A stretch of 64,000 nucleotides of DNA from positions 62,001 to 126,000 of the forward strand of contig NW_020845097.1 in the NCBI RefSeq assembly GCF_003704095.1, given 5' to 3'. Positions within the stretch are counted from its first letter, which is position 1; the number at the start of each line of letters is the position of its first letter. Of the stretch, positions 13,112-63,619 are shown piece by piece. Below the pieces are notes generated by a model. It was not told the origin of the DNA and made no database searches. It saw only the letters and a program-made list of their open reading frames with translations. Origin of the DNA: Pocillopora damicornis (Eukaryota). The position numbers were made by a program, and so were the translations under genes.

Positions 13112-14839
13112 ATGGCGGGAAAAACGAGCCGCAGAGCGCGGGGATTCAAGTGCAAATATTTCCAGAGAGGAGGAAAACGGAATTCTATTCTTCAGTGTTC
13201 TAGACAGGTAACCATTAATTTTCTGTAATTTTTTTTAAGGGAAAAACATTTCGTCTAACAATTTACCATACCGTTCATTTTTCGCAAATAGATGTCCCTC
13301 CTCTGAATTTATATCCCGTTTTAGGAATACAAGTCTTCGAAGTACGGATTACCTAGAGATTCTCCTTAATTTAAATCTAGCGAACTGATTCCATGGCTTT
13401 TACAAGTAGCGAGGACGGCATTTTTCACTTTCTTCCGCCTCAAATTTCTCGCGAACAATAAGAGGACCTCAATTAAAAAAATACTAATACTAAAACCCCG
13501 CGCAATTAAAATACTCCGTGGAAAGAACTCTATTAGTGACATGCCGCAAACTTGGAATCTGCATATTTTAGGTTAAATAGTTTCGTGTCTTTTGTGTTTA
13601 TTCCTTTATATAGCTTATTTATTCATTTTTTATCTTACTCTCGTACTTGTTATATATTTAGGAATAAGGCTATTACAACCTTACGTCATCAATGGTAAAA
13701 CGCTGTCTTTACCAAAAAAACAGTTAACGCTGAATTTCATTAGCTTGTAACGTACGAAATTAAGCTTTAATTTGACTGACATCAAGAATCAAACTATCAT
13801 TTATATCTACACAGAAGAGTAAACTGAAACCATCTCAGATGACTGTACCATTCAGTTACACGCAGTCTCCGTTTCTGTTTCATCACGTTCCAAATTCGCC
13901 ATTTTTGTTGTCAACAAGGAGACCTGCGACACAATCACCAATCCCATTGGTTCCCGACGTCGAACTCGCGAGAAACAACAACTATTCTTCAAATGATGTA
14001 CTTCGAAATGGTAAGCCTAAGTGTAAAGAAAAGTTCGAATCTGTGCAAATGCAAGAAAGTTTAAAGAAAGCCAAAGGAATTGTGGCAAGAGAACAACTCA
14101 CCCTTCCCTACGCTCTTGGTGTTCCTCTTCATTAAATAAAGGAAGAAACGTTTGTACCTTTTTATACATTGGAACGAAACCAGCTGTCTTGCAAGCTAAG
14201 TTTTGCAATTGTTCTCTTTTCTTTTTCTGACAGGAACTTTTCTTTCTCCCACACCTGTAGTCCCATCAAATTCCAATCCAACAACACCACAAGCAACTCC
14301 AACCAGGATAAATGCTTCTTCTGATTCACAAAGAGGTAAACTCCAAACTTTCAAAATAAATTATTTTTTCTATATGGCAAGGTAGTCCTGAGTTAAATTG
14401 AAACCTTATGATTGGTTTCCACTCAGTCCTTGGTTTTGTTTGCAAAAGCCAATAAATTCAAGATAAACAAGTTTGGTCCAAGTGCCATGTAATAAACCAC
14501 TTACTGACTGCACTTGTTCAAGCTGTACTGCCATGACCTCAGGCCAATATTCCTCAGTACAGTCCTCGCACATGGTTAGTGCAAAATTAGTAAAATTGAT
14601 AGAGTCAGCAATAATTGAGCTCCTTTGTATTTACTATGAAAAAAAACAACCACAAGGAAAGGACAAGGGCTTGAAATATAGACCTTTGCATTGAACTGCA
14701 CTCATGAAATGGTAAACACAGGGTAAGATCCATTGTAACTTCCATAGTTGTTAGTTTTACATCAAAATGTTACATCTTTCAAATCCCTGAGCAAAAATGG
14801 TTTTTAGCTTTTGCTTTTATTGCAGTGTCAAGTAGTTAA
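13112..14839 (+). CDS. Small uncharacterised protein (~127 aa). Four exons: 13112-13207, 13839-14010, 14234-14335, 14826-14839
   Basis: ATG in a strong context and three GT-AG introns with consistent phases (0,1,1) give MAGKTSRRARGFKCKYFQRGGKRNSILQCSRQ-MTVPFSYTQSPF...DVLRN-GTFLSPTPVVP...SDSQR-VSSS*. No homologue recognised; the last exon is uncertain. Confidence 0.55.
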
Positions 14840-16107
14840 ATTGTGTGGCTAATGGCTTCCACAAATTTTAAGTTCATCATTTGAGTACTCTTATGGGCAC
14901 ATGCACTGGGTCAAAAGTTTAGTTTAGATCTTTTTGGGCAAGAGTTAACCACCGAACTGTGACATGAGAAAGAAGTACCCTTGCATTTTTTCCAGAACAA
15001 GTTGTTCCACATTTCTCTCCCATGATGGAAAATAAATCACTTAACAGAAAGGAAAGGAGGCTGGATATGTCACCAAAGCAGGGTACAGTTCCAGAGATTA
15101 ACCTGTTTTCAGGGGAAGAAATATTTGCTTGATGGCCATCCTGACCCTTCACACATCTCCCAATTGTACCTTGTGAAAAACAATTTTTAACATCGAGATC
15201 AGGATATTGTATGGTTCTTAGCTTTAAAACAAATCAACATTAAATTTGGTTTTACTCAACTAAATCTGAGGTTAGATATTGCATGCATATTTACAAAAAT
15301 TTTGTTGAATGTACAGTTCAGTCAGAGTTTTGGATGTACATTATGCAACAGTAAGTTATACAATGTTGGGCATTAGATAAAGAAGTTTGAATGAGTAACA
15401 ACTGCACTTTCATGAAAACCTAAAATTTGGAATGTAATGGTAATCATTCAAACTTGTTTTTATGAATTAGCCTCTATTCCAACTAACAAAAACAGAAAAT
15501 TGGGGCAAACATAATGTAAAATATTTATGCACACCGTCAATAAATTATCTTTAATTCCAACTTTATTTGGTGCATTGCAGCACATACTTTGGTATTACAA
15601 ATACAATTAGTTGAAGTTCTTGGATATTTTTGTTACAGACTTTTATGAGTAACTTTTTTAAACACAGTGTACTGAATATATTTCCCACAAATTGTGCAGC
15701 TATAAATAATTTTAATGAATTGTTGAATAAATTACCCACAAAAAGAACTGTTTGAAGTATTAAATTTCTATTTATAATTTCTAATATCAATATTTCTTGA
15801 GCTAGCAATTAAAGATTCATGCTTTATCTGAGAGAAAACATCCAGGAATATAAACAAAAACAAACTGAAAAAACTTGACCTAGAACTAATAAAGAGCAAT
15901 GGAAAATGATAAAGCACTGTGCATTAAAACTTTGACCATTGTGTCAATGAGTTAATTACTACAGTGTATTAGTCCAATTAAATATTGCATTCTACCTAAT
16001 TAGATACTAGATTTCCTGAGTTTCCAAGTGTGTTTAATACCAGCAGACATCAGTGGAGTCACATGTTTGAAATTGAGAAGATAGCCAAACTGTTCAAGCC
16101 ATGTTCC

Positions 16108-19100
16108 CTACTCAGTTTTCTGTTTTCTCTTCTTCTCTTCGAGTGCTTTCTCATAATTTTCTTTGGCAACTGCAATGCGTACCCACTTGGGTTTTTCAGA
16201 CACCAAACATCTTGCAATTACAGCACACAGTATCAAGAAATGCTCAATGCAAAACACAATAGCCACAACATACCTGAAAAATGAAAACAAATTGAGATTG
16301 CCAAGTGCAAATTAATAATATTAATACAGAAAACAATGGGAAATGTTATGTGTTTCTTATGATCTCATTTATCCTACTTACCTTCCATATCCAGAAACAA
16401 TGAACTGATCATTGTCAATGGTCTCATACATCCAGGGACACCAAATAGCAAGTTGTTCCGAAGAAAATCCAACAATTAAACTGTTTGTAAGCATGGAGAG
16501 GACCATCATCTGGTAAAGGACATTGTACCACACACCAATATTGGATACCCTGCGAAAGGACTTATAAATCTTAGCTTAGCAACCACACAGAGAATTCTAG
16601 GACAAGATATTGAGGACTTCTTTTTAATGACTTTTGAAGTGACCAAATAGAGAACTTTCTTCTCTTCCTGGATGAAATTATTCCTTGCCACACCACTCTT
16701 ACATAACATTCACTCATACAGCGAACAATGTAGACAGCGAATGTGTTTAGGCATCTTTAAGCCTTTAACTCCCAAGATCTCATTAGTAATTCTCTTTACA
16801 GTCTGCCATACAATTCTTATGATGTCAATTTGGAGAATTTGGTATTGAATCAACTAATAATCCCCTAATTGATATTTTGCTTTATTCTCATAACTTCTAT
16901 GCTGATATTGTTTTGATATTGTAAGGAGAAATTCTCTCCTGGTCACTCATGGGAGGTAAAGGGTTGATAAGGAAACAAGGAGCTCCTGGGGGACAGAAGG
17001 GACAAATGTCACTCAACAGCTGACCAGTTGCAGTACAGAGGCCTGGGGCTAATTCAAGTTATTTTGCAGGATAACAATAAATTGTTTTAGTCTTCATTAG
17101 TTTGAGCCAACAGACAAGTGAAAGACAGTTTGAATTTTGAGAATTTAGAAGTTCTGGGGTACTGTGTACATGTTCATGTTGACCTGCAAGGAACTAACCC
17201 TGGACATACCTTCTTACTCGTGGTCGTTGACACACATAAAGTAACTTGAACAAATCAGCCCTTCCCTCTATGAACAAGAACACGATGCTCACAACAGCAG
17301 CAAGTGGAAATGCAGAGGCAAACAGTGTCACATACTGGTGAACAAAAGAAATTGTTGATTGATTGCTATTGAAATTGCTGATACTTGAAGTATGCAGTAC
17401 ATATGTTGTATATGAACTTTGTAATGGGCCTTGCTCACCATAGAGTTTCTGCAGCTCAGTGGTAGAGCAGGGAACACAGAATTTGAACATCTGTGGTTAG
17501 ATTCCTCATGGGGACTTTGTCCCACGCTTGAGATAAGACAAAAAACATCTTTCTCTATTTCTTTACCAAGCTCAAAACTTTCCCTCTTATTCTAATAAAT
17601 TAATAAACATACTTGACTTAATTTTTCCATAATATGTAAAATTTAAAAGTCAGGAATCAGTGAACTATTGGAATTTAAAATATACTCTCCTTTTTCATGT
17701 TTTTTGTACAATTACCTAACTTTATAACCAGATTAATAATAAACTGCTAATTTGAAAAACTATACTTACCCCAAACTGTACAACCATTTCCAAATAATCA
17801 TCAAACTGTTCATATTCCTCTAAAACAATGTCCCGCTGAGCCTATCATCAGAAAGATGTGCTAATTAAAATTAAGACCAGACAACCAGTAGACCAAAAAT
17901 AAAATTAAAATGCAAGGAAAAATTAAATCTGAAGAAAACAATGCAACTTGTAGCTATGTTTGCATTATAAATGGTTGAACAGATCAGTGCATTCACCTGA
18001 GAAGGAATAAATGTTTTCTCTTCTGAATCCTTTTTGCTTTTAGCATAATCTCTCTGTATTTTCCATACATGACCTTTCTCTGTCAAATATGGGAGAATTG
18101 ATTCTGTTACTAGGCGACGAATTTCATCACCTAAGACAAAAACAGAAAGGCAAAAAAGTTGGTGAATCTAAATATTGAATCAGTGGAAATACAACTGCAA
18201 ATAATCCTCTTTTTGCTCAAATGACATTCCCAATTCCCCCCCACCCAAAAAAAAAAGGGGAATCCCAAAGGGGTATAACTTCACTCACACACTTACCCCA
18301 AAACAGTCCAACAAGTTCTCTCCTCAGAGCAACAACATTGAGCTGGTAGAATGCAATGTAGAAGAGAGGAAGGAAGCAGTCAAAGACCTCAAACAAGACC
18401 CGTTTTATTATAAGAGAGTTGTCCCAATCTTTTTCAGTCCTGTAAAAAACAAGAGAAAATTATAACAATTGAGTTCTTTCTGTAACAAAGTACAAAATTG
18501 TGTTCCATTGTGGAACAGAAAAATCACCCAAGATGAATAATCATTCTGTCCATTGCCATATCTATTGCTTAACCCTTTGCACCCTAATATCAGAATACAT
18601 ATTCTCCTTAGTGTTCTCTTGATACATTTCTGAGCTAACAAAGAGAATTCATTTCACAATCAAGAGATTCTTTAGTTGATCATTTCCTTTATTCTCATAA
18701 CCTCAATGTGTGATTCATGGTGATACTGTGAGGAGATATCAGATGCCAATCACTCTTAGGTGTCAGAGGGTTATTTGCAAAAAGTAATTTAAATTCCTAG
18801 CACTTAATAAATAAACATCCTTTTCATCAAATTTCATTTATATCTCAATGTCTTAACCTTTTAAGTCCCAGTAGAGACCCAGACAGAATTTCTCCTTACA
18901 CTATATGTATGATATCAAGCAGACATGTAATGAGAATAAAGAAAGATATCAACTAGGGGATTATTGGTTGATCCAATTTCAAATTCTCCAAACTAACATC
19001 ACATGAATTGTATGACAGACAGTAGGGAGAATTACTGATGAAATCTTGGGAGTTAAAGGGTTAAACACCTGCCATTCCTTGTCCAGGTTGTAGAGAACAA

Positions 19101-25037: not shown

Positions 25038-26030
25038 TTATAGTGATTTGTGCTCTTCCTCCTTGTTCGATCGAAGACTCTTACCAAACCATAACACTAT
25101 ACCGCAGTTAATTACACAAATAAACACCATAAGACCTAAACTGTTCCCAAATGTTGCAATTGGGAAACGCTCCAAATCGTTTCGTCTCGATTCCATTTGG
25201 ATTTGAATGGCTGTGAATTGATCCGCTGCCCCAAGAGCAGTGAAAACATGGAGGAAGTGATGGCTGTGGCCAACGAAATCGAACACACCGGGTATTAACC
25301 GCTCAGGCATTCGCGACATGTTGGCTAACGCAGAAATTAGGTAGAAGACCGAGTGACGTCGGAAATAGGAGATGGCGAGCTGCTCTTCCGGCGTATCAAA
25401 CTGGGATGGTGAATCCACAAATACACGATGTAAATATGGGAAACTGTTGAAGAAAAACGCTAGCACAAAGCAAAGCGTGCGAATAACGTATTTCATCTTA
25501 GGCCATCTGTGCCTCGAGGCACAACAGGTGAAGGTTGAGAAAACGGAAATTAAACATGAAATCGCTAGGAAAGCGCTACAGGAATTGAACAAAGTGTCAC
25601 TACTATTCAGAGAGCGACTGTAGAAGTAGAATGCTTGTCCTGCTCCGACACTGTAAACACTAATTGCTGAATAATCGAAGAAGAAGCAAATGTGTCGTAC
25701 TCTCGGAGACATGGAGTTGAAAAGATGTGCTCCAGAACTCATCAATAAAAATCCGCAGATTCCAATGGCAAATGACAGCAAAGGATACACATAGGCGTCC
25801 TTGATAAGAGAATATTTCGAGAATAAGAACGTAAAACGTACCAGGAAAAGCAGAAAAGGGACAAAGTGTGTCCAAACGTTGACAGTTTCGTTCAGTGGCA
25901 AGAAAGCACTCTTCACACAATCCATCGCCGTACTGTAAGGTTTGCGATAGCCAGAACAGATGAACATTTCGCGGAATTGAGCGGGAACTTCATCCGAGCG
26001 CAAGCCGAACTGTTGCCGTTTCTTCTCCAT
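25038..26030 (-). CDS. Progestin and adipoQ receptor (PAQR), class II membrane progestin receptor-like; intronless CDS, 330 aa
   Basis: Motifs EVP..FRE..I.SGYR, NETVNVWTH, SSGAHLFNSMS...FFFDYSAIS and PERLIPGVFDFVGHSHHFLH, plus seven hydrophobic segments. The paralogue (PAQR5-9) cannot be resolved by eye. Confidence 0.95.
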   Translation of the reverse strand: MEKKRQQFGLRSDEVPAQFREMFICSGYRKPYSTAMDCVKSAFLPLNETVNVWTHFVPFLLFLVRFTFLFSKYSLIKDAYVYPLLSFAIGICGFLLMSSGAHLFNSMSPRVRHICFFFDYSAISVYSVGAGQAFYFYSRSLNSSDTLFNSCSAFLAISCLISVFSTFTCCASRHRWPKMKYVIRTLCFVLAFFFNSFPYLHRVFVDSPSQFDTPEEQLAISYFRRHSVFYLISALANMSRMPERLIPGVFDFVGHSHHFLHVFTALGAADQFTAIQIQMESRRNDLERFPIATFGNSLGLMVFICVINCGIVLWFGKSLRSNKEEEHKSL

Positions 26031-27297: not shown

Positions 27298-28832
27298 AAT
27301 AGTGAAGAAATGCAAGTGCAGAAAAAATTGTGTGAAATAAGTCAAATAATACCAAGAGTACAAATGACATGTGAGTTGAGTGTAAATATCCTACAATATT
27401 GAAAAGTTGGTTGTTTTGTACTGTAAAAAAACCTGTTTAACAGGTTGGCTATGCACACTATGGATATCAACTATAGAAGTTGGATAATAAACAACTTTTT
27501 AAGTCATTTTGGTGTGAATTACAACTGAGTACTTTCACTCCTTGTTTGTATTTTGACTTGCCCTATGGACTCAGTAAAATACAGCCATGACCTGCAAAAA
27601 TACAAAGTGATATACACAAAAACTACTAAGAAGGTATATTTACATATCTGCAACTATGTATCATGATTTGTCAGGGTTTTCAAAAACTTGAAAAAAATAA
27701 AAGTCATTTGGTTTTCTCTTTCTTTTGTTTGGAAACCCTGATGAAACACTTGCACTCATTTTTGAAATAGTACATCAATAATTTTTTTTCCCTCCTTTAG
27801 AATCTAAAACAATATCACATAGAGTTCTAGCACTAGCTTTTGTAAATTTAGCTATCCTTCAACCATTACTATCTACAAATTATCTGAAATATTTACATTA
27901 CTGTAACTATATAATGCCACATCTGAGCAAAGTTATTCCTTGTTATTCCCTTCCTAATATATTTCTAAAAATCACTATTTGTCTGTAAATCATTTTGGCT
28001 TGATTGCATGCATAATATATGTGAATTTAGCACAAAAAAAATTGAAAAAGTACCTACTTTGAACAGGCCCTCCCCCCTCAAAAAAAAGCTAAAAAATGAA
28101 CTCCTCTAATAATAACATCTCCAATATACATTCAACATTCTTCATGTGCTTCATTAGGTGTTGTCATGTAACACACTATCTGGTAGGAAAGGGGAATAGG
28201 TTTGTGCCATGGAAAGACCAAAAAACAGTTGCATAGGAGGCTTCTGAGGCACTGCATTAAAAAAACTTTAAAAAACTTAAAAAATCCCATGTCTCTCTTT
28301 AAAGCTCCTCCAGAGAAATATCCACAATCAGTTAGAACCGGTAAGTCTTTTCTTAAAGAGAACATGAGGAATTAATTAATTGTGGAACTTTCACATAAAT
28401 TTCTGCTTCGATGAAAAGTTGACTACCTACAGCTAAGATGAGGCTGAGGCAATTCATATTGCATCTCCACCACAGTTTTAAGCTACATGAAGCTTCCATT
28501 TGTTTTCTGTCGTTAAAACATAATAACACACTCCACTTCTTAATCCTTCACTTCCAAGATATCATTAATAATTCTCCTTACTGTCTACAATACAATACAT
28601 ATGATGTCAGTATTTCAGTATTAGATCAACTAATAATCCCCAATTAAAACTATAACAAAATTTGGGAACATGATCGGTTATCACCAGCCTGATCAAACAT
28701 GAAAAGGACAGTGTACACATCATACTTGTAATTGGATAGTACTCATCAAGTGTGGGTGCTGTTACCATGCATTTCACAAAGCAAAAAGTTTGAAAGTATA
28801 TAACCAATCTGGTTTTTTTGTCATAGTTTTGA

Positions 28833-29045
28833 TTAACCCTTTCACTCCCAAGATCTGATTAGTAATTCTCCTTACTATCTGCCATACAATTCTTATGATG
28901 TTAGTTCAGAGAATTTGGTATTGGATCAACTAATAATCCCATGATTGATAGATCTTCTCTATTCTCATCACCTGCCTGCTTGATATTGTATTGATATTGT
29001 AAGGAGAAATTCTGTCTTGGTCACTTGTGGGAGTGAAAGGGTTAA
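28833..29045. mobile_element. piggyBac-type MITE, the best-preserved copy
   Basis: TTAA-CCCTTTCACTCCCA...TGGGAGTGAAAGGG-TTAA: perfect 14 bp TIRs and a TTAA TSD. Confidence 0.9.
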
Positions 29046-29636
29046 TTGGTAACAGGATTTAATATCATCCAATTCTGTCTGTAACCATATGCCTAATTAA
29101 CAAATCGGACTCATACTTTTAGGTCATTTGATTTGTTAATCACTTGTATGATCACAGAACAAATTCGACTCCACTCTGTCCCACTACCAGTACTCATTGA
29201 TATTTCCCTTTGTTTTCATTCTCATTCTGTCTTGGTCACTCATGGGAGTTACAGGGTTAAGATAAGTGAGCCATATGAGGTGGTGTGCTCCTGCTTAATA
29301 ATCAGGCTTGTAGACTCAGAATTTAGTCAAGGGCCTTTTTTGAGCCCTGGCTGTTTCATGGTTTTGCATGTTGGGTGAGACACTTTCTCCTCTCACAAAG
29401 CTTCTCTTCATCCAGGTGTATAAACATGTTCAAGCAAACTGTCAAAATATCAATGGGTAACCCATGACAGAGAAGCATTCTCTCCTGCAGGAGAAAGGAT
29501 ACTCCTAAACACTACCTCGTGCAGTGTTAGGGCCACTACCTCCATACAACATAAACCAAACATGTAGTGTAAAACACTGCAACATGTAATGTTCAACAAA
29601 AATCTATTCTCCATCCACAGAGGAATGTCTCCCATT

Positions 29637-31758
29637 TTATGTTGATTTACACTTGCATTTGGACTTCTTTGAACCTTTCGTCAACTTTACCTTATCATCA
29701 GTCTCAGCCAGTTCAATTTTAATTGTACCAAGGTCAACAGACCTTGTGAGAAGCTGAATCATTTTTTTGAACATGTCTTCAATATTTCCAACATCTAAAG
29801 CACTGACCTCTAAGTAGCTTAGCCCATGACATTTGGCAAGCTCTTCACCCTCCTCACGAGAAACTTTGCGATTCTCTTCTTGGTCGATTTTGTTGCCAAT
29901 GAGAATAATCAAAGCATTAGTTTCAGTGCAGTAAAGGTGAGCTAGGTCAAGCCACCTGGAAATGTGCTGGAAAGTTTCACGATTTGTTACATCACACACC
30001 AGAAAAATGCCATGTACTCCACGAAAATACATGGCTTGCACTGCAAAGAACTGCTCTTGTCCAGCAGTATCAACTACTTCTAAATGTACAAACTTGGAGC
30101 CATACTTAAAGGACTCAATGTCAACTTCTAAGCCTATGGTCATTGTACTCATAAAAATGTCATATGCAGGGTTTCGAAAGCGCTGAAAAAGGCATGACTT
30201 CCCCACTCCCCTATCACCTATGAAGAGGATCTTAAATTTGTAGTCATAACTGGGTTGACGCTGCACCTTCTCAATTACAGCTTCTTCATTCATTTCATAA
30301 GACTCAGAATGCCGCACTAGGTTCCACTTGTGCTTCTCTAATTCTATTTTGATATCTTTAGCAGATGGACGACAGCTGCTGTCATTCTCCAAACACCTGA
30401 GTACTAAACTTTGTACTAAATGATCTCCCATCTCGTTGATGTCAGCTTTGCGACGTTCATATTCACTAACCTTCTTCCCGCCTGAAAGAAATTAACATAA
30501 CAAAAGAGTTACATTAAACTCTTTGCAAGAAATAACTGACAATCACTTTATTGAAACACTTTATTGTAAACCAGGCATTTTGAAAAAATGTTCTTTTAGG
30601 CAGGAATTTAATGGTACTAGAGTGTGATTTTGTTGAGTTATTAGAAAAAATATAAACAATGAACTGCTTGTGATGATGCTCTAAAAGCAAGATGGCTATT
30701 AGGCCACTTGAGTAGAATACTAGGACATCATGTGTGTGTGGTACATACAATTTCAGTTGAGTGAGGGCAACAAGTTTGTCAACCACATTTTGACGTTAAA
30801 ATCATATTGTTGTCATGGGCAACTGGCTGTTTTTCCAGTAAGGACATGTCTATGGGCCTCTTTTGGCAGGTTTTCACCTGTGATGGTTGGCAATGCACAG
30901 CCATTAATTAAGACTCAGTTACCTCTGGAAACGAGGAAGGTTGCCCATGATCAAACAGTAATTTTATGACCAAAACCCCATCACCAAACATTTATTGCAC
31001 ATCACTCAACTAATAATCATAATACCTTTGGTAATTGGAGAAATTGGCCAGACTTTAGGCTCATGACCAACAGCCATGGCCAGTAACATGACACCAAAAG
31101 AAAATATATCCACTCGGGGACCATACTTTGCATCGTTCACGATTTCAAAATTCTCCATAGCTGGATATGTTTCTGGTGCTGCATAAACTGGTGTGCCTCG
31201 CACGGGAGTTGCATACATTTCGTACCCTTGGACAAAAACTTTAGCCACGCCCATGTCCGCGATCTTGGCAGTGCCGGTATCTGTTAGTAGGATATTTTTT
31301 GTCGCCAGGTCGCGATGGACAATTGGATTTTCTAAGCCATGCATAAACTGAAGACCTTGAATCACGTCTAAGGCTATGCATATCAGATGAATTAGTGGGA
31401 CTTTTGGGGACGACTTCGATTCTCTAATGAACCTTTCCAGATCACAGTGCAAAAGTTCTGTAATAATTACAGGCAATCTTCCCTTGGGAAACACAACTTC
31501 ATGGAATTTGACCACGTTCGGATGATTGAGTGACTTGAGGGCATCCCATTCTCGCTGGAACTCTTCTCTAAAGTGGTCGATCATTTGGCCGCAGCTATCA
31601 TTAGCGAGAACGGCGTGAAACCTTTTCGCTGCCACTTCTTTTCCTTTCCATAGAGCTTTGTACACTTTTCCATACGATCCCCTTCCAATTTCTCTTTCTA
31701 GCACAAGGTCCTTCACATGAGACTCAAGTGACTCTCCCTCGGCTTGTTCCTGATTCAT
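29637..31758 (-). CDS. Protein kinase-Rab GTPase fusion protein (~525 aa). Coding exons 31758-31026 and 30481-29637
   Basis: Exon 1 carries kinase subdomains I-IX (IGRGSYGKV, VAAK, HPNVV, HRDLATKN, DMG, GTPVYAAPE, DIFSFG). A phase-1 GT-AG intron (31025-30482) joins in frame to GGKKVSEYERR...CLENDSSCRPSA (subdomain XI). The same exon continues into a full Rab domain (GDRGVGKS, TIG, DTAGQE, YFRG, LVCDVT, GNKID, EVSA) ending CKCKST*. Confidence 0.9.
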
Positions 31759-32339
31759 GCTACTAGTTCGTAACTGCCGGTTCTTTCTTCTTACAGCGAC
31801 GACTTCTGAAACATGTTGGGCAAACAAGATAGTGCAGATTGTAAATTAAAGGCAAATCAAGTGAGATTTTCCGTGTATGCAGTTAAAAAGACATTAAATT
31901 AAATATTTTTAGCTAATATTTCGCATCTTTTAGTGTGTCCATGGACGCCAAAATCGAAATACACCATCGCTATGCATTCTGGTTAATGTTATGTCACGCA
32001 CCTTACCCGGACTAAGTAAAAAAACAACAACAACAACAAGAGACTAGCAAAGAAACCTGTCGAGTTCCCCTTTCTGACTAACTTTTAGCCATTTATTGTT
32101 TCTACCTCACACAATGGTTAACTTTTCTTGGAGTCGAAGGCGTGATTCGCCCAAAAATTTCCGATAACGACTCTTATATTTCCGATGGCCACCTCGAATG
32201 ATTACAATGGTTAAGGTTGCGCTCCATTTAAATTTTAATCATGAAACGAAAAAAAATTATCACAGAAAAGTACGATAATTCGTAAACAAATCTCTTTTCT
32301 CGTATTCGAGCGAGTCTATTATGTTTTATTAACTTTGAT

Positions 32340-32372
32340 AAGACCACGCCCATTACCAGGGCATGCGCATAG
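32340..32372. promoter_or_regulatory. Candidate proximal promoter motifs of the kinase-Rab gene
   Basis: CCACGCCC (Sp/KLF) next to GCATGCGCA (NRF1-like). On the - strand, a donor at 32006 and an acceptor at 31806 define a likely 5'-UTR intron. Confidence 0.4.
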
Positions 32373-32387
32373 ACAAGAGAATATCAA

Positions 32388-32587
32388 GTAATTTAGTGTT
32401 AACAACTGAGTTGAAAACGTAAATTAGCCATCGCAAAAGGGTAAAGAAGCTGACGTTTCGAGCGTTAGCCCTTCGTCAGAGCTAATGAAGGGCTAACGCT
32501 CGAAACGTCAGCTTTTTTACTCTTTACGGTGGCTAATTTACGTTTTCAACCCAGTTGTTAACACTAAATTACCTGCTATACTCTCCT

Positions 32588-32620
<33 letters not shown>

Positions 32621-32632
32621 ACCCCCTTTATT
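32388..32632. mobile_element. Penelope-like element terminal fragment in inverted duplication (~185 bp palindrome, 32388-32572), carrying hammerhead ribozyme cores
   Basis: GTAATTTAGTGTTAACAAC...AATTAGCCA is mirrored by TGGCTAATT...GTTGTTAACACTAAATTAC. The centre reads CTGACGA-A-GGGC-TAAC-GCTC-GAAA-CGTC on the - strand. Confidence 0.7.
32449..32482 (-). ncRNA. Minimal type I hammerhead ribozyme motif
   Basis: The reverse complement is GCU-CUGACGA-A-GGGC(UAAC)GCUC-GAAA-CG-UC-AGC: conserved core boxes, a 4 bp stem II and a palindromic ACGU in place of stem III. Confidence 0.55.
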
Positions 32633-33629
32633 CAAGAGAATACCAGTTGATATTCTCTTACCCATGCGCATCCAAGATAGAGAAGGAGACTACCCTCCAA
32701 GCGAGGCCGAGGAAGGATAGAAGAGAGAGCTGCCCTATTTGCGACGCATAGCTAAGACTTTCAAAGTGGGGATTACATGGACGAATTTTATTGCGCCTTA
32801 CGTGAGAGGCTAATACCGCTCCTTTATCTTGTTTATTGGCAAACCTGAATTCATGCAGCGAAAAGGACCGAAAAATATAGCGAATAAGCGCCCACGTTCT
32901 AATAAGCACCCTCCCCCGATTAAGTGCCCACTCTTGGGCCGTAATATTAAACAATCGCCCCCCATGAACAAGCGTCTTTTCCCTCCTTCTTCACTTTATT
33001 AAATAGTAGGGATACGAATTTTTAATAGGGATCCCAAATTTCTTGATATTTCTGCATAAACGATGCTTAAAACCTTTATTTTTCGTTCTCCACAATCATT
33101 AATGACATCGGTCAAGAAATGTTGCCTGAAACTTAGCTTTAAAGAGTTGCTCGCTCCCAAATATTGGCAAAATGTATGAATAATTCAAATCTAACGCAAC
33201 AAAACACATGGTTCATTCGACTTCTTGCCTGACGATATGAGGGAACTTGAACGAAACTAGCTCATTTGATTGTATTCTCAGAGATAAACACTGAAGAAAT
33301 TCGCATACATTGAAGTTTTCTACGAAATCGTTGACTTTCCCGTGCTTGATATGTCCTTGAACCTACATTTTGCTCAAAATTGCTCTGAAAAGCAAAATTC
33401 TTATGAAACGCAAAAATCGCTCGAGGTTTCTAGAACCGCAAAAAGTTGCTCCAAACGCCAAAAGTTTCTGTACGTGATATGGTTTCAGGTACGTGACTGG
33501 AGTCTCTTACAGAACCCCACCCAATCGTGTTCCACCCATCTGGCGCCCCCCATGACTCAGTCACTCCTCATCTCCAAACGGACGTGATATAATAGCCAGG
33601 ATGAGAAAGTTGAGGAAGATGTCGATTAC

Positions 33630-33906
33630 AATATTTATTTATATTTCAGTCAGAATGTCGCGTATGGCTTCTCTTACAACGCCACACCTCAACTTCAGCA
33701 TAACGTATGTGAGCGGCGGCGTTGAGCACCAAATGGAAAGTTAAATAATTTGCCGTTGGGGTTTCCGTTCTCAAACCACACAAATTTTGGTGATTTCGCG
33801 TTGCTGTTTTGCAAAGGACGTGCTGAGCTATTGTTCTGCCCAGTATGTCTTTTGTACTGCCACGTCCTCGTTGGCGTCACCATAATGGTTTGCTTAAGGT
33901 TCCTAA
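33630..33906. repeat. Degenerate interspersed repeat/MITE; related copy at ~54635-54998
   Basis: Both loci share GTTGGGGTTTCCGTTC...GATTTCGCGTTG...TTTT.CA.AGGACG...GGTTTG...TCC(C)TA. Confidence 0.55.
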
Positions 33907-35724
33907 TGAGAAAAAATCGGGTCGTGGACCGTCCTTGCCCGTTTAAGATATCACTTTAGCTAAGTGATCCAGCAGTTTTCTTTCTAAATATAACTTTCCG
34001 TTTAGCTTGAGGCCACATATCCGGCTTTTATGACCTGTAATTGGATCTCTAAGTCACCCACTCACTCAATAATGTCACCTTTTTTAAAAAGATATAACCC
34101 GATCGTATTTTCTGCTTTCCGTTATGTCTTTTTTAGCTGAAACATAAATAAGTCAGTATTTGCTAAAGGAAGGCGTCATTGCACAAGACTTGACGCCTAC
34201 TAGAAGTAAAGGGATCAAACTTAGATTTATTAAAGTTAGATAGCGGAAGTGTTTAAGCTATTAATTCTACAAATCGACTATAGACCAATCATGCGCAGCT
34301 CGCATAGAACTTGTGCGTGTTCCACTGAACATTCAAGGGCGCCATCCATTAATTGAATTATGTAGTGATGCTAAACGGTAACAATCAGAGTTATAGTCGC
34401 TAAAAAGGTTTTTCTTAATGATTCAATCACATAAAAAAAAATAAACTTCTCGTCTTGAGGATCTACGCATTGTGTTGTTTATTAACGGCTAGGTAAGAAC
34501 TTAACTGGTCAATTTGTGGCTTCATGGCACTATGAATGGTCATTTTCATCGAAAAATGCTCCCTTGGTTGGAATCAATTAGATCTTTGGTGAAATCCTTA
34601 CATCCGGTTTGTTTTGGAGATCACGCGAAATCAGCTAAGTCACGCTTTTCAATTAGAGATATTAGTCGAACGCTTTTCTATGACAATTGTAATGCAGACA
34701 TTTCCACACCAAAAATGTTTATTTTTGCATGAGTCCTATCCACTTTTCTTTCCGGTTAAATTTTCAGTTTACAAGTACTCGTCCGCCAAGCGCTGACACT
34801 CACGACAACCTCGTTAAGTACACCGCTCAAAGATTTAATTACCCGGCCGAGCTGTTGGATCTGGACAATCCTTTATTGCCTAAAGGTAAAATTACCCGGA
34901 TGGCCGAAAATTGCTTAGTGCTGATCAATTATAGAATACACTTTTAATCTCTTTCTAGGAGTATTTAATGCAAATCAGATTTCCCCCTATTAGGAAATTT
35001 ATTGAGTGTTAACCGAGAGTTTTCCGGTAACTGAATCCTGAAAGGCCGGTGACTTCGGCTAGAATCCAACCATGCACGATCTTGTTTCGAAAATTATTTT
35101 TTCAAAACTGGAAAATATATACTGTATATTCTCATTGATTTTTAATAAACTTTTCAAAGGAAGCAATGTTTTCTGACATTTCCTTACTCTAGAATATTTC
35201 CATTAGTACTAATACTACATAGGGGTTAGACTAACTCCCTCTGTGCAGAATGTTTGTGTTTGATGAGGGGCAAATTAATAGAGATAAAGAGTAAATTGGC
35301 CTTATTCCAGGTTTCCTAAAACTCCGCCCACGATGCTTCGAATTTTTTTTTTTTTTTTTTTTTTTTTAACCAGACTAGAGTCGAATGAGAGGAAATCGGC
35401 CTTGCATATACAAAACTTGAAGTGAGGAAAATAAAAACTTCTATTCATTTCAGTCGTTATCGGTATCTGCTGAATGTGATATTCAATATATTTGTCTTTC
35501 TTTTGACATTTTTACCCGATTTAAACCCGTCCTGACAGATAAGCCGTCTAAAATAAGCTTTATCTCTGGTAGCAAAGAAGGAAAGCAACCCGATTTCTCC
35601 TTTTTAAGTTTCACTGCTTCTTTTCAGAACGCTGATTTCTTTTAAGATTAAAAAATAAAGATGAACACAAATCAACAAGCGGAAATTGCAAATTATGCGA
35701 TGATTTGAAGTTGTAATAAACGAC

Positions 35725-62905: not shown

Positions 62906-63281
62906 ATGTCGGTGCTATTTCAAATGTTCGGGATCTTTTCCACCTGTATTTGGTCCGCTATATGGATAAATGTCGTCCAAGTCCCTACTATAAGTGGATG
63001 TAAGTTGTGCAACAGCAAAGTGGAACGAGAGAAAAGATTGATTACTGTCCAAGGACAAATTTTGGCGAAGCTCGGTTTAAAGAAGCCCCCAGATGAAAGT
63101 GAAAGTGCTTCGAATGTGAGTCGTCAGGTCTTGCAGACCTACAAAAGTGCGGTGAGGGAAAAAGACAAGCTTTTACTTGAGACGAAAATTTGCCGTTCCC
63201 AGATTGACACCGAAGAGTTTTTCGCGAAGAGAGTTGAGCGAATTCTGCTGGAAAAAGAGGTCGCACGAACGGCTGTATCAA
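62906..63281 (+). CDS. Exon 1 of a TGF-beta superfamily ligand precursor (signal peptide and start of prodomain); the gene continues beyond the window
   Basis: Hydrophobic leader, CxxC, then KRLITVQGQILAKLGLKKPP (alpha1/latency lasso), VLQTY (alpha2) and [11 protein letters not shown] (fastener-like). A phase-1 donor A|GTGAGT lies at 63281/63282. Confidence 0.9.
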
Positions 63282-63619
63282 GTGAGTATGCCATGATAAC
63301 CTTAAAGCTGATTTACATTTAAAAAAACTTTTAATTAGTTTTGTTGTTTCATGATCCATCGTCTTCATTTAATGAATACCGAGATTTTAGTTTATCGCCA
63401 CATTCACTTTTCTCTTGCTAACTTGTCATGACAGCCGTAACTACAAGAACAGGAAAATACGCTTGGAACTCTGTTAATCTAACTGTGAAGGAGACGAAAA
63501 TTGTAGTTTGAGAGAATGGCGAGTCCGAGATATCCGATAGTAAGTGGACGAGGTTACACTGTTCTTGAATAAGTTTCTGTATACATTGAAAAAAAAAACT
63601 CCAAACGAAGTTCAAGATG

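What the first reader, a model, noticed from the sequence alone, without database searches (positions are those of the whole stretch)
29637..31758. Protein kinase fused in frame to a complete C-terminal Rab GTPase with a prenylation-type tail
Seen in sequence: the end of the kinase C-lobe (CLENDSSCRPSA) and the whole Rab domain lie in one uninterrupted exon, so the fusion does not depend on the splice prediction. The kinase keeps the Gly loop, catalytic Lys, alphaC Glu, HRD..N and APE, with a TK/TKL-style HRDLAxxN loop and DMG in place of DFG. The GTPase keeps G1-G5 and the catalytic Gln, has altered RabF motifs (VDTAGQE for WDTAGQE, QFFAV for RFRSI) and ends KKSKCKCKST. Established: the familiar kinase+small-GTPase proteins are Roco/LRRK/DAPK, which always have a COR domain, and large Rabs (RAB44, RASEF, CRACR2A) carry EF-hands or coiled coils, not kinases. 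Inference: this could be a membrane-anchored, GTP-switched kinase module. The intronless Rab half suggests a retrocopied Rab captured by a kinase gene. A role in phagosome/symbiosome or immune signalling is speculation.
Basis: partly seen in the sequence, partly recalled or inferred. Interest (0 to 1): 0.85.

Follow-up and report, generated by a model that had tools for sequence, protein, structure and literature searches.

The report
Coral kinase fused to Rab GTPase
This is a real, expressed two-exon coral gene that joins an active-looking protein kinase to a complete Rab-type GTPase with a lipid-anchor tail, and it belongs to an old gene family of stony corals and sea anemones that appears never to have been described.

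Summary
A minus-strand gene (mRNA about 31941 to at least 29232) has two coding exons, 31758-31026 and 30481-29640, with the stop at 29639-29637. They are joined across a 544-nt GT..AG phase-1 intron and encode 525 aa.

- **Domains.** Exon 1 matches Pfam Pkinase (3.6e-38). Exon 2 carries the kinase C-lobe end, a short linker, a Ras/Rab domain (1.8e-43, nearest solved Rab1/Ypt1) and the tail ...KKSKCKCKST.
- **Transcript.** Contigs from RNA-seq runs of four studies (three poly(A)/oligo-dT libraries, one random-primed) carry exactly this joint. Three of them run on through the Rab half.
- **Family.** Full-length kinase+Rab proteins without COR exist in Stylophora, Porites, Montipora, Acropora, Oculina and Actinia. 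All are auto-named or "uncharacterized".
- **This genome.** Besides this gene it holds at least three more subtypes, in two clusters.
- **Conservation.** The Actinia copies share the two-exon layout, broken at the same point of the protein. Both halves each separate from their nearest non-fused relatives by a single branch. Catalytic residues are invariant or nearly so. dN/dS is about 0.15 (kinase) and 0.09 (Rab).
- **Tail.** Two C-terminal cysteines occur in about 57 of 64 relatives. The motif is canonical (CXC, CCXXX) in sister subtypes but non-canonical here.

It is not a ROCO protein. The best reading is a membrane-anchored, GTP-gated kinase. The retrocopy and symbiosis ideas are unsupported. 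No paper describing the family was found.

The parts
31759..31941 (-). 5'UTR. RNA contigs of two runs end at 31941 and a third at 30 nt... corrected: a third at 31930. It holds three short upstream ORFs.
   Evidence: table 8 (X1 and X5 records end at 31941, X12 at 31930); sequence.
31026..31758 (-). Coding exon 1: aa 1-244 plus the first base of codon 245. It carries the kinase N-lobe and most of the C-lobe: Gly loop 25-30, K45, E70, HRDLATKN 148-155, DMG 168-170, APE 194-196.
   Evidence: Pfam Pkinase 3.6e-38.
30482..31025 (-). Intron, 544 nt, GT..AG, phase 1. It lies inside the kinase C-lobe, not at the domain boundary.
   Evidence: sequence. table 5 (joint 30480/31025 in 4 of 4 RNA runs). 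Actinia paralogues break into two exons at the same point of the protein.
30345..30481 (-). Start of exon 2: the end of the kinase C-lobe (GKKVSEYERRK...CLENDSSCRPSA...ELEKH), including the family-invariant Arg of subdomain XI.
   Evidence: P0051's Pkinase match runs to the equivalent point.
30234..30344 (-). Linker of about 37 aa between the kinase and the Rab core. It ends in the Rab1-type N-terminal motif SYDYKFK. There is no COR domain.
   Evidence: AlphaFold pLDDT is below 50 at 304-310 in the homologue model.
29751..30233 (-). Rab-like GTPase core with G1-G5 and the catalytic Gln: GDRGVGKS, T359, DTAGQ, NKID, SAL.
   Evidence: Pfam Ras 1.8e-43. Nearest solved structures are Rab1a/Ypt1, E=1e-40.
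29640..29750 (-). Hypervariable C-terminal tail, ending in a polybasic stretch plus two cysteines: KKSKCKCKST (C520, C522).
   Evidence: About 57 of 64 family tails carry two C-terminal cysteines.
29637..29639 (-). Stop codon TAA.
29232..29636 (-). 3'UTR, minimum extent. Contigs break where a dispersed repeat begins (about 29231-29236); one run continues to 29031. The true poly(A) site was not determined.
   Evidence: table 8.

Best explanation
**What it is (shown).** This is a genuine, transcribed two-exon gene encoding a 525-aa protein. An N-terminal TKL-like protein kinase (aa ~17-290) is joined by a ~35-40-aa linker to a complete Rab1-like small GTPase (aa ~325-490). The protein ends in a basic tail with two cysteines. 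It is the single-copy 'type A' member of a kinase-Rab gene family that so far has been found only in Hexacorallia (stony corals and a sea anemone). A single fusion fits the data, followed by diversification into at least four subtypes, often in tandem arrays.

**How it most likely works (inferred).**
- The Rab module is lipid-modified on its C-terminal cysteines and cycles between GDP and GTP.
- In the GTP, membrane-inserted state it holds the attached kinase on one endomembrane. There the kinase phosphorylates local substrates, probably on Ser/Thr and possibly with dual specificity.
- This would be a built-in, one-polypeptide version of the way Ras-GTP recruits Raf or Rab-GTP recruits LRRK2.

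**Open.** Whether nucleotide state also controls the kinase allosterically through a kinase-Rab contact.
For: **One transcript.** RNA contigs from four studies carry the exact exon joint. They run from the 5'UTR through kinase and Rab into the 3'UTR with no indels.

**One ORF elsewhere.** An uninterrupted 524-aa ORF with the same architecture sits on cDNA contigs of another coral (L017/L018).

**Family.** Full-length Pkinase+Ras proteins occur in Stylophora, Porites harrisoni, P. lutea, Montipora, Acropora, Oculina and Actinia. The own genome holds paralogues on contigs C871 and C4076. Actinia has at least five tandem copies broken into two exons at the same point of the protein.

**Single origin.** The Rab halves separate from the 38 nearest single-domain Rabs by one branch (SH-aLRT 96). 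The kinase halves separate from the 75 nearest non-fused kinases by one branch (99). Both trees give the same type A + Actinia grouping.

**Function kept.**
- In the 12 full-length sequences the kinase residues K45, E70, HRD, N155, D168, G170, APE and R282 are invariant. With the N-terminally truncated P0172 added, K45 and E70 drop to nearly invariant.
- The GTPase residues G333, G338, K339, D382, G385, NKxD and S471 are invariant in both alignments.
- dN/dS against the P0169 cDNA is 0.15 for the kinase, 0.085 for the Rab and 0.13 for the linker.

**Tail.** About 57 of 64 family tails carry two C-terminal cysteines. The motif is canonical (CXC, CCX, CCXXX) in types B and C.

**Relatives.** The Rab half is nearest Rab1/Ypt1 (1e-40). 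The kinase half is nearest the Raf-like MAP3K CTR1 (1.2e-24).
Against: - No biochemical or localisation data exist. GTP binding, kinase activity and prenylation are all inferred.
- The tail of this gene (CxCxxx) and of most type-A orthologues (CxxCxxx, CxxCx) is not a canonical Rab geranylgeranylation motif.
- The Rab-family motifs used by REP and GDI are altered: RabF2 reads HLEVV instead of KLQIW, and RabF3 reads QFFAVQ instead of RFRSIT. Handling by the Rab prenylation and GDI machinery is therefore uncertain.
- This gene has DMG where every other family member aligned here has DLG and most kinases have DFG.
- Inter-domain packing is unresolved. The AlphaFold pTM is 0.69 for the closest full-length homologue, the Atlas model of the Actinia protein has pTM 0.52, and no PAE or coordinates were available.
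- The complex test could not be run.
Confidence: 0.6

Rival explanations
1. The Rab half is only a passive membrane address. It is a constitutive lipid anchor plus a compartment label, with no nucleotide-dependent control of where or when the kinase acts.
For: - The linker is short and poorly predicted, with pLDDT below 50 at 304-310.
- The Atlas model of the Actinia protein has pTM 0.52, as expected for two unfixed domains.
- Linker length differs strongly between subtypes.
- The RabF2 and RabF3 motifs are degenerate.
Against: - The GTPase residues, including the catalytic Gln (nearly invariant), the switch I Thr and NKxD, are kept across subtypes.
- The Rab core has the lowest dN/dS of the protein, 0.085. 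That is more constraint than a mere anchor would need.
Confidence: 0.2
2. The control runs the other way. The kinase regulates its own Rab, or neighbouring Rabs, by phosphorylation, as LRRK2 does to Rab8 and Rab10. The protein would then be primarily a trafficking GTPase with a built-in modifier.
For: - LRRK2 phosphorylates Rabs of the Rab1/8/10 group in switch II (established knowledge).
- The fused Rab is closest to that same group: Rab1, Rab2, Rab10 and Rab8.
Against: - By my reading of the alignment plus recalled Rab10 numbering, the switch II position equivalent to the LRRK2 site (Rab10 T73...RFRT*IT...) is Ala in this protein (QFFAVQ). It is Ala or Ser in the relatives.
- The kinase shows no special similarity to LRRK or Roco kinases: Roco4 scores 4e-20, behind CTR1, WNK and TNNI3K.
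Confidence: 0.12
3. The kinase half is a pseudokinase or scaffold because of the DMG motif. The protein would then act as a large Rab whose N-terminal domain only binds partners.
For: This gene carries DMG instead of DFG or DLG. Pseudokinases are common in expanded TKL families (general knowledge).
Against: - All other catalytic residues are intact and invariant or nearly so across the family.
- DLG, the family's usual form, occurs in active TKL kinases such as RIPK1 and the type I TGF-beta receptors (own knowledge).
- Met is a conservative replacement for Leu.
- Kinase dN/dS is 0.15.
Confidence: 0.06
4. Artefact: two adjacent genes joined by a mis-assembly or by read-through, or a chimeric contig.
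For: None found. RNA 'contigs' cannot by themselves show protein products.
Against: - The kinase domain itself is split by the intron. Its last helices lie in the same exon and the same frame as the Rab.
- The identical joint appears in four studies.
- The same architecture and exon structure occur in several coral genera and a sea anemone.
Confidence: 0.02

Closest known systems
ROCO proteins (LRRK1/2, DAPK1, Dictyostelium Roco4, MFHAS1)
   Same: A Ras-superfamily GTPase and a TKL-type kinase lie in one polypeptide, so a G-domain and a kinase could regulate each other in cis.
   Different: - There is no COR domain.
- The domain order is reversed: kinase first, GTPase at the extreme C-terminus.
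- The G-domain is a Rab (Ras 148 bits against Roc 78 bits; nearest solved Rab1/Ypt1), not a Roc.
- It carries a C-terminal di-Cys lipidation-type tail.
- There are no LRR, ankyrin or WD40 repeats.
- The protein is small, 525 aa.
- The kinase is no closer to Roco4 than to CTR1, WNK or TNNI3K.
Rab1/Ypt1-group Rab GTPases
   Same: - Full G1-G5 set and catalytic Gln.
- YDY(L/K)FK N-terminal motif.
- RabF4 and RabF5 retained (YFRGV, LVCDVT).
- C-terminal cysteines.
- Best PDB matches 1e-40 to 1e-36.
   Different: - It is fused behind a kinase.
- RabF2 lacks the Trp (VVDTAGQE).
- RabF3 reads QFFAVQ instead of RFRSIT.
- There is a two-residue insertion before switch I.
- G5 is SAL, not SAK.
- The tail is CxCxxx rather than CC or CXC.
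Large Rab GTPases (CRACR2A, RAB44, RAB45/RASEF)
   Same: A C-terminal prenylatable Rab domain sits behind a long N-terminal functional extension.
   Different: Their extensions are EF-hands plus coiled coils. Here the extension is a catalytic protein kinase, and no EF-hand or coiled-coil Pfam hit was found.
Ras-Raf and Rab-LRRK2 recruitment modules (separate proteins)
   Same: The proposed logic is the same: a lipid-anchored GTPase in the GTP state brings a TKL kinase to a membrane. The nearest solved kinase is the Raf-like CTR1.
   Different: Here the two partners are covalently fused. There is no Ras-binding domain and no armadillo or ankyrin Rab-binding site. This is an analogy only and was not tested.

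Membership tests
ROCO family | A COR domain immediately follows the Roc GTPase | tested here: not met
   Pfam scans of both exons at E<=0.01 show only kinase and small-GTPase families. The same holds for the full-length relatives P0051 and others. The Rab lies at the C-terminus, followed only by a ~35-aa tail.
ROCO family | The G-domain is of the Roc type and lies N-terminal to the kinase | tested here: not met
   Ras PF00071 scores 148.4 bits against 77.6 for Roc PF08477. The nearest solved structures are Rab1/Ypt1. The order is kinase then GTPase.
Rab family of small GTPases | G1-G5 nucleotide-binding boxes and the catalytic Gln | tested here: met
   GDRGVGKS, T359, DTAGQ, NKID and SAL are present. 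G333, G338, K339, D382, G385, N441, K442, D444 and S471 are invariant in 18 family members.
Rab family of small GTPases | Closest sequence relatives are Rabs | tested here: met
   The top 60 PDB matches are all Rab/Ypt/Sec4, with Rab1a best at 9.8e-41.
Rab family of small GTPases | The five RabF motifs (IGVDF, KLQIW, RFRSIT, YYRGA, LVYDIT; Pereira-Leal and Seabra, recalled from memory) | tested here: inconclusive
   By eye: F1 IGLEV (partial), F2 HLEVV (not kept), F3 QFFAVQ (not kept), F4 YFRGV (kept), F5 LVCDVT (kept). The Actinia and type C relatives are closer to consensus, with ERF.S and LVYDV.
Rab family of small GTPases | C-terminal double-cysteine geranylgeranylation motif (CC, CXC, CCX, CCXX, CCXXX) | tested here: inconclusive
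   Two cysteines are present (C520, C522) but as CxCxxx. About 57 of 64 family tails carry two cysteines. The canonical forms CxC (9), CCxxx (5), CCx (3) and CCxx (1) occur in other members. Actual prenylation cannot be tested here.
Active eukaryotic protein kinase (TKL-like) | Gly loop, VAIK Lys, alphaC Glu, HRD..N, DFG Asp, APE, subdomain XI Arg | tested here: met
   All are present and invariant or nearly invariant in the family. The DFG Phe is Met here and Leu in every other member aligned. The Pfam scores for Pkinase (131.9 bits) and PK_Tyr_Ser-Thr (114.5 bits) are close to each other, which I read as typical of TKL kinases (own knowledge). The nearest solved structures are CTR1, WNK1 and TNNI3K.
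Large Rab GTPases (CRACR2A/RAB44/RASEF) | N-terminal EF-hand and coiled-coil region | tested here: not met
   No EF-hand or coiled-coil family appeared in the Pfam scan. The N-terminal 290 aa are a kinase domain.

The most novel reading that the evidence does not exclude
Hexacorallia evolved their own self-contained GTPase-kinase switch. A prenylated Rab1-derived G-domain is fused in cis, without COR, to a Raf/CTR1-like TKL kinase. Its nucleotide state would gate both the membrane residence and the catalytic output of the kinase. The family then radiated into at least four subtypes in tandem arrays, each possibly addressing a different compartment, and the symbiosome or phagosome could be among them. 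This would be a second, independent solution to the design problem that ROCO proteins solve.
Probability: 0.3. Interest if true: 0.75.

Novelty: new variant of a known kind. Interest (0 to 1): 0.6.

Why it matters
Kinase-plus-GTPase proteins are known almost only as ROCO proteins. There the COR domain and dimerisation make the coupling between the G-domain and the kinase hard to take apart, which is the central open problem for LRRK2.

A small 525-aa natural protein offers a minimal model of that coupling. It links a Rab directly to a kinase, is conserved between stony corals and a sea anemone, and is expressed in coral holobiont transcriptomes.

It also adds a lineage-specific signalling family to cnidarian cell biology. 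At least nine loci lie in this one genome, in tandem arrays that suggest ongoing diversification.

Public annotation currently mislabels the members as "GTP-binding protein YPT1", "receptor-like protein kinase At5g59670" and similar. Expression studies will therefore misread them.

Tried and rejected
- **Artefact or read-through:** rejected.
- **ROCO membership:** rejected. There is no COR, the order is reversed, and the G-domain is Rab-type.
- **Large-Rab (EF-hand) membership:** rejected.
- **Retrocopy capture:** I added this genome's four intronless Rab-like genes (C2045 x3, C2955) to the Rab tree. They fall among ordinary Rabs, not next to the fused Rab. The idea gains no support, though it is not excluded.
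- **Kinase-Rab docking test:** It was not run, so there is no verdict.
- **ESM Atlas:** P0169 is not held. With P0051, no large cluster combining Pkinase and Ras was returned, only kinase clusters.
- **Foldseek:** the full-length homologue model matched PDB kinases only (TMq about 0.4). No solved chain matches both domains together.
- **Literature:** seven full-text searches and one on the misnomer "GTP-binding protein YPT1" found no description of a kinase-Rab fusion. PMC12289216 and PMC12630909 were opened and are unrelated.
- **Stylophora locus:** The look-up of encoding contigs had no record for P0171.
- **Earlier scan notes:** nothing on this gene.
- Full-length analyses used natural homologues. 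P0169 is 69% identical to exon 1 and 79% to exon 2.
Full report
**1. The observation**

On the minus strand there are two long open frames. The upstream one (31827-31006) contains the first in-frame ATG at 31758 and matches Pfam Pkinase at 3.6e-38, covering profile positions 3-196 of 263. It therefore stops inside the C-lobe. The downstream one ends at the TAA at 29639-29637 and stays open upstream to a polypyrimidine-AG acceptor at 30482/30481. It begins with the missing end of the kinase C-lobe (...RRKADINEMGDHLVQSLVLRCLENDSSCRPSAKDI...) and continues, without any stop, into a Ras-family domain (PF00071, 1.8e-43).

- A GT donor follows ...ATTACCAAAG at 31026. The intron is 544 nt and phase 1, and the split codon G|GC encodes Gly.
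- No COR, EF-hand or other domain is detected.

**2. Is it one transcript?**

Eighteen public runs hold the stretch, and 13 of them are recorded as RNA. I laid contigs of four RNA runs from four different studies on 28200-34000.

- All four show the same joint, 31025/30480, skipping 544 nt with CT..AC on the plus strand (GT..AG on the gene strand).
- A 2166-nt contig (X1) and a 2367-nt contig (X5) run from 31941 through both exons to 29232 and 29031. X12 covers the joint and the whole of exon 2.
- Depth in the middle of the intron is zero. Only one low-depth X9 piece lies in its 5' part.
- No insertion or deletion is listed in the CDS.
- Of the 18 listed nucleotide differences in the CDS, nine are synonymous and nine are not, and none is a stop.
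- The contigs end at 31941, 31941 and 31930, which suggests that no upstream exon exists. The N-terminus also aligns with that of the relatives.
- The 3' end is not fixed, because contigs break where a dispersed repeat starts.

**3. Relatives**

A full HMMER search with exon 2 returned many ORFs of 260-340 aa that cover both the kinase tail and the Rab. These are exon-2-type calls on eukaryotic contigs. It also returned one 541-aa protein with Pkinase (18-285) plus Ras (328-498): Actinia tenebrosa XP_031572102.1, auto-named "receptor-like protein kinase At5g59670".

Searches seeded with that protein and with family alignments found further full-length Pkinase+Ras proteins:

| Source | Protein | Public name |
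|---|---|---|
| Actinia tenebrosa | two more paralogues (P0166, P0167) | auto-named kinases |
| Stylophora pistillata | P0171 | "GTP-binding protein YPT1" |
| Porites harrisoni | P0170 | hypothetical protein |
| Porites lutea | P0349 | uncharacterized |
| Montipora foliosa | P0268 | uncharacterized |
| Acropora palmata | P0269 | uncharacterized |
| Oculina patagonica | P0277 | hypothetical protein |
| Transcript contigs from Logan runs and JGI samples | many | none |

Searches give the contigs. I believe the JGI samples are coral metatranscriptomes, but that is recalled, not checked. Every named full-length family member is a hexacorallian. None from Nematostella, Exaiptasia, octocorals, medusozoans or non-cnidarians appeared. 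That is a blank from a word-seeded search, not proof of absence. Two fish hits are Eph-receptor+Rab models that I take to be prediction chimeras, though I did not check them.

An uninterrupted cDNA ORF of 524 aa (L017 292-1866), 69% and 79% identical to exons 1 and 2, is independent evidence for a single product in another coral.

**4. A multigene family with an old, fixed gene structure**

The window's own genome (234.35 Mb, 4393 contigs) has this gene once. It has other kinase-tail+Rab loci on two contigs.

- **C871:** four tandem copies of a "type B" (P0176-like, CCxxx tails) and one "type C" (P0179-like, HRDIKSxN catalytic loop, CxC tail).
- **C4076:** several "type D" (Oculina P0277-like) exon-2 copies.

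In Actinia a 24-kb stretch holds at least five tandem copies, each broken into two exons at the same point of the protein, about residue 240.

Trees of the two halves agree.

- The Rab halves of all subtypes lie on one side of a single branch, away from the 38 nearest single-domain Rabs (SH-aLRT 96; 92 after adding four own-genome Rab-like genes).
- The kinase halves lie on one side of a single branch, away from the 75 nearest non-fused kinases (SH-aLRT 99).
- Both trees join type A with the Actinia copies.
- The window gene's nearest relative is the Stylophora protein, at 84% identity in the kinase. This fits a pocilloporid coral.

These are quick, unrooted trees with some long branches. They are consistent with a single fusion before the Scleractinia-Actiniaria split and do not prove it.

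**5. Constraint**

In the 12 full-length members, the kinase residues G25, G27, G30, K45, E70, H148-R149-D150, N155, D168, G170, A194-P195-E196, D217 and R282 are invariant. So are the GTPase residues G333, G338, K339, D382, G385, N441, K442, D444 and S471. T359, Q386 and A472 are nearly invariant. In the 18-row alignment, which adds the N-terminally truncated P0172, the N-lobe positions (Gly loop, K45, E70) drop to nearly invariant.

Nei-Gojobori estimates against the P0169 cDNA:

| Region | dN/dS |
|---|---|
| Exon 1 (kinase) | 0.15 |
| Linker | 0.13 |
| Rab core | 0.085 |

dS is about 1.2-1.3, close to saturation, so these ratios are rough. Both halves are clearly under purifying selection.

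**6. What each half resembles**

The Rab half is closest to Rab1/Ypt1 (9.8e-41), then Rab2, Rab10, Rab8 and Rab14.

- It keeps the Rab1-type YDYxFK N-terminus and the RabF4 and RabF5 motifs.
- It has lost the Trp of WDTAGQE.
- It has QFFAVQ in place of RFRSIT.
- It has two extra residues before switch I.

Relatives in Actinia and type C are nearer the Rab consensus, so type A looks derived.

The kinase half is closest to CTR1 (a Raf-like MAP3K), WNK1/3 and TNNI3K. Roco4 appears only at 4e-20. By my own reading of the sequence, the catalytic loop HRDLATKN is tyrosine-kinase-like while the P+1 loop GTPVYAAPE is Ser/Thr-like, a combination seen in dual-specificity TKL kinases. DMG is unique to this gene, and every other family member aligned here has DLG. 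From my own knowledge, DLG also occurs in active RIPK1 and type I TGF-beta receptors.

**7. The tail**

About 57 of 64 family C-termini carry two cysteines within the last eight residues.

- Types B and C have textbook Rab motifs: CCxxx, CCxx, CCx and CxC.
- Type A, including this gene, has a polybasic PKKSK stretch followed by CxC or CxxC and then one to five more residues.
- The tail is therefore "prenylation-type" by descent and by conservation, but it is not canonical here.
- Lipidation by geranylgeranyl, or by palmitate next to the basic patch, remains an inference.

**8. Structure**

AlphaFold2 on the closest full-length homologue with an 18-row family alignment gave mean pLDDT 80.5 and pTM 0.69. 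Kinase and Rab folds were confident, while the linker (304-310) and the tail (495-513) were weak. A pTM of 0.69 is somewhat higher than expected for two freely placed domains. The Atlas model of the Actinia protein has pTM 0.52, and I had no PAE or coordinates.

Foldseek matched kinases only. No solved chain has this two-domain arrangement. The docking test with controls could not be run. Whether the Rab touches the kinase is therefore open.

**9. Mechanism**

*Shown:* one gene, one mRNA, conserved catalytic residues in both halves, a conserved di-Cys end, an ancient family.

*Inferred:* the Rab module is lipidated and GTP-cycled, and it places the kinase on a particular membrane in its GTP state. 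This would be a covalent version of Ras-Raf or Rab-LRRK2 recruitment.

I put about 0.6 on this reading and more than 0.95 on the gene model itself. The rivals are:
- a passive anchor with no switch (0.2);
- a kinase that modifies its own or other Rabs (0.12), weakened because the position I equate with the LRRK2 site is Ala here;
- a pseudokinase scaffold (0.06);
- an artefact (0.02).

**10. Comparison and novelty**

It works somewhat like a ROCO protein but fails the membership tests for that family: no COR, reversed order, and a Rab-type rather than Roc-type G-domain. It is a Rab by its nearest relatives and G-boxes, with partly degraded RabF motifs. It is not one of the EF-hand large Rabs.

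The sequences are already in public databases, but only as automatic and mostly wrong names. Eight full-text searches found no paper describing a kinase-Rab fusion. The library lacks most subscription journals, so this is not proof. I rate it a new variant of a known kind: a multidomain Rab, or a GTPase-kinase fusion.

The family does exist and is annotated in bulk.

**11. Surroundings**

The next gene downstream on the same strand is a single-exon PAQR/HlyIII-family ORF (25038-26030, 3.2e-35). Dispersed repeats with very high RNA depth flank the gene at 28782-29363 and 32274-32661. No paralogue lies in the window.

Noticed in passing
window 25038-26030 (-): A single-exon 330-aa ORF matching Pfam HlyIII (PAQR/adiponectin-receptor family) at 3.2e-35. 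It is the next gene downstream on the same strand.
   Followed up: partly
window 28782-29363 and 32274-32661: Dispersed repeats flank the gene. RNA contig depth reaches 10^4-10^5 and there are many conflicting joints. Two copies of a ...CCC(A/T)(T/C)(G/A)AGTGACCAAGACAGAAT... unit lie in the 3'UTR region at about 29225-29262 and 29006-29040. Transcript contigs break there, so the poly(A) site is unknown.
   Followed up: no
G000:C4076:155000-187000 (loci L022-L025): There are four to five 'kinase tail + Rab' exons of the Oculina-like subtype at about 155.5k, 163.4k, 166.5k (one in-frame TAA) and 182.6k, plus decayed pieces at 168.5-169.9k. A kinase exon-1 match occurs only at 185870-186802. These could be partial duplicates, pseudogenes or alternative 3' exons.
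   Followed up: no
G000:C871:12000-37200 (loci L019-L021): One contig holds five kinase-Rab genes of two subtypes. One is type C on the plus strand (12062-17999, ~4.4-kb intron). Four are tandem type B copies on the minus strand, and one of these has a shortened exon 2 (28797-29111).
   Followed up: partly
G000:C2045:1477782-1479860 (L002, L003); also C2045:1117376 (L006) and C2955:109245 (L011): Intronless Rab-like ORFs of 229-241 aa. Two of them are adjacent and end in CCSFS. They group with ordinary Rabs, not with the fused Rab. Many top hits are proteins with two to four tandem Ras domains.
   Followed up: partly
L016 (Actinia tenebrosa WAHB01000816.1, 38561-62204): At least five tandem two-exon kinase-Rab copies lie next to an ADAMTS-like gene. 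One copy (about 15367-17083) looks fragmented.
   Followed up: partly
proteins P0241 (930 aa) and P0368 (992 aa): Unidentified eukaryotic proteins with other kinase-plus-small-GTPase layouts. P0241 carries Pkinase, FYVE and Ras. P0368 carries Pkinase plus Roc/Ras. Kinase-GTPase fusions may have arisen elsewhere too.
   Followed up: no
window 62906-63322 (+): An ORF with a TGF-beta propeptide match (5.2e-06).
   Followed up: no
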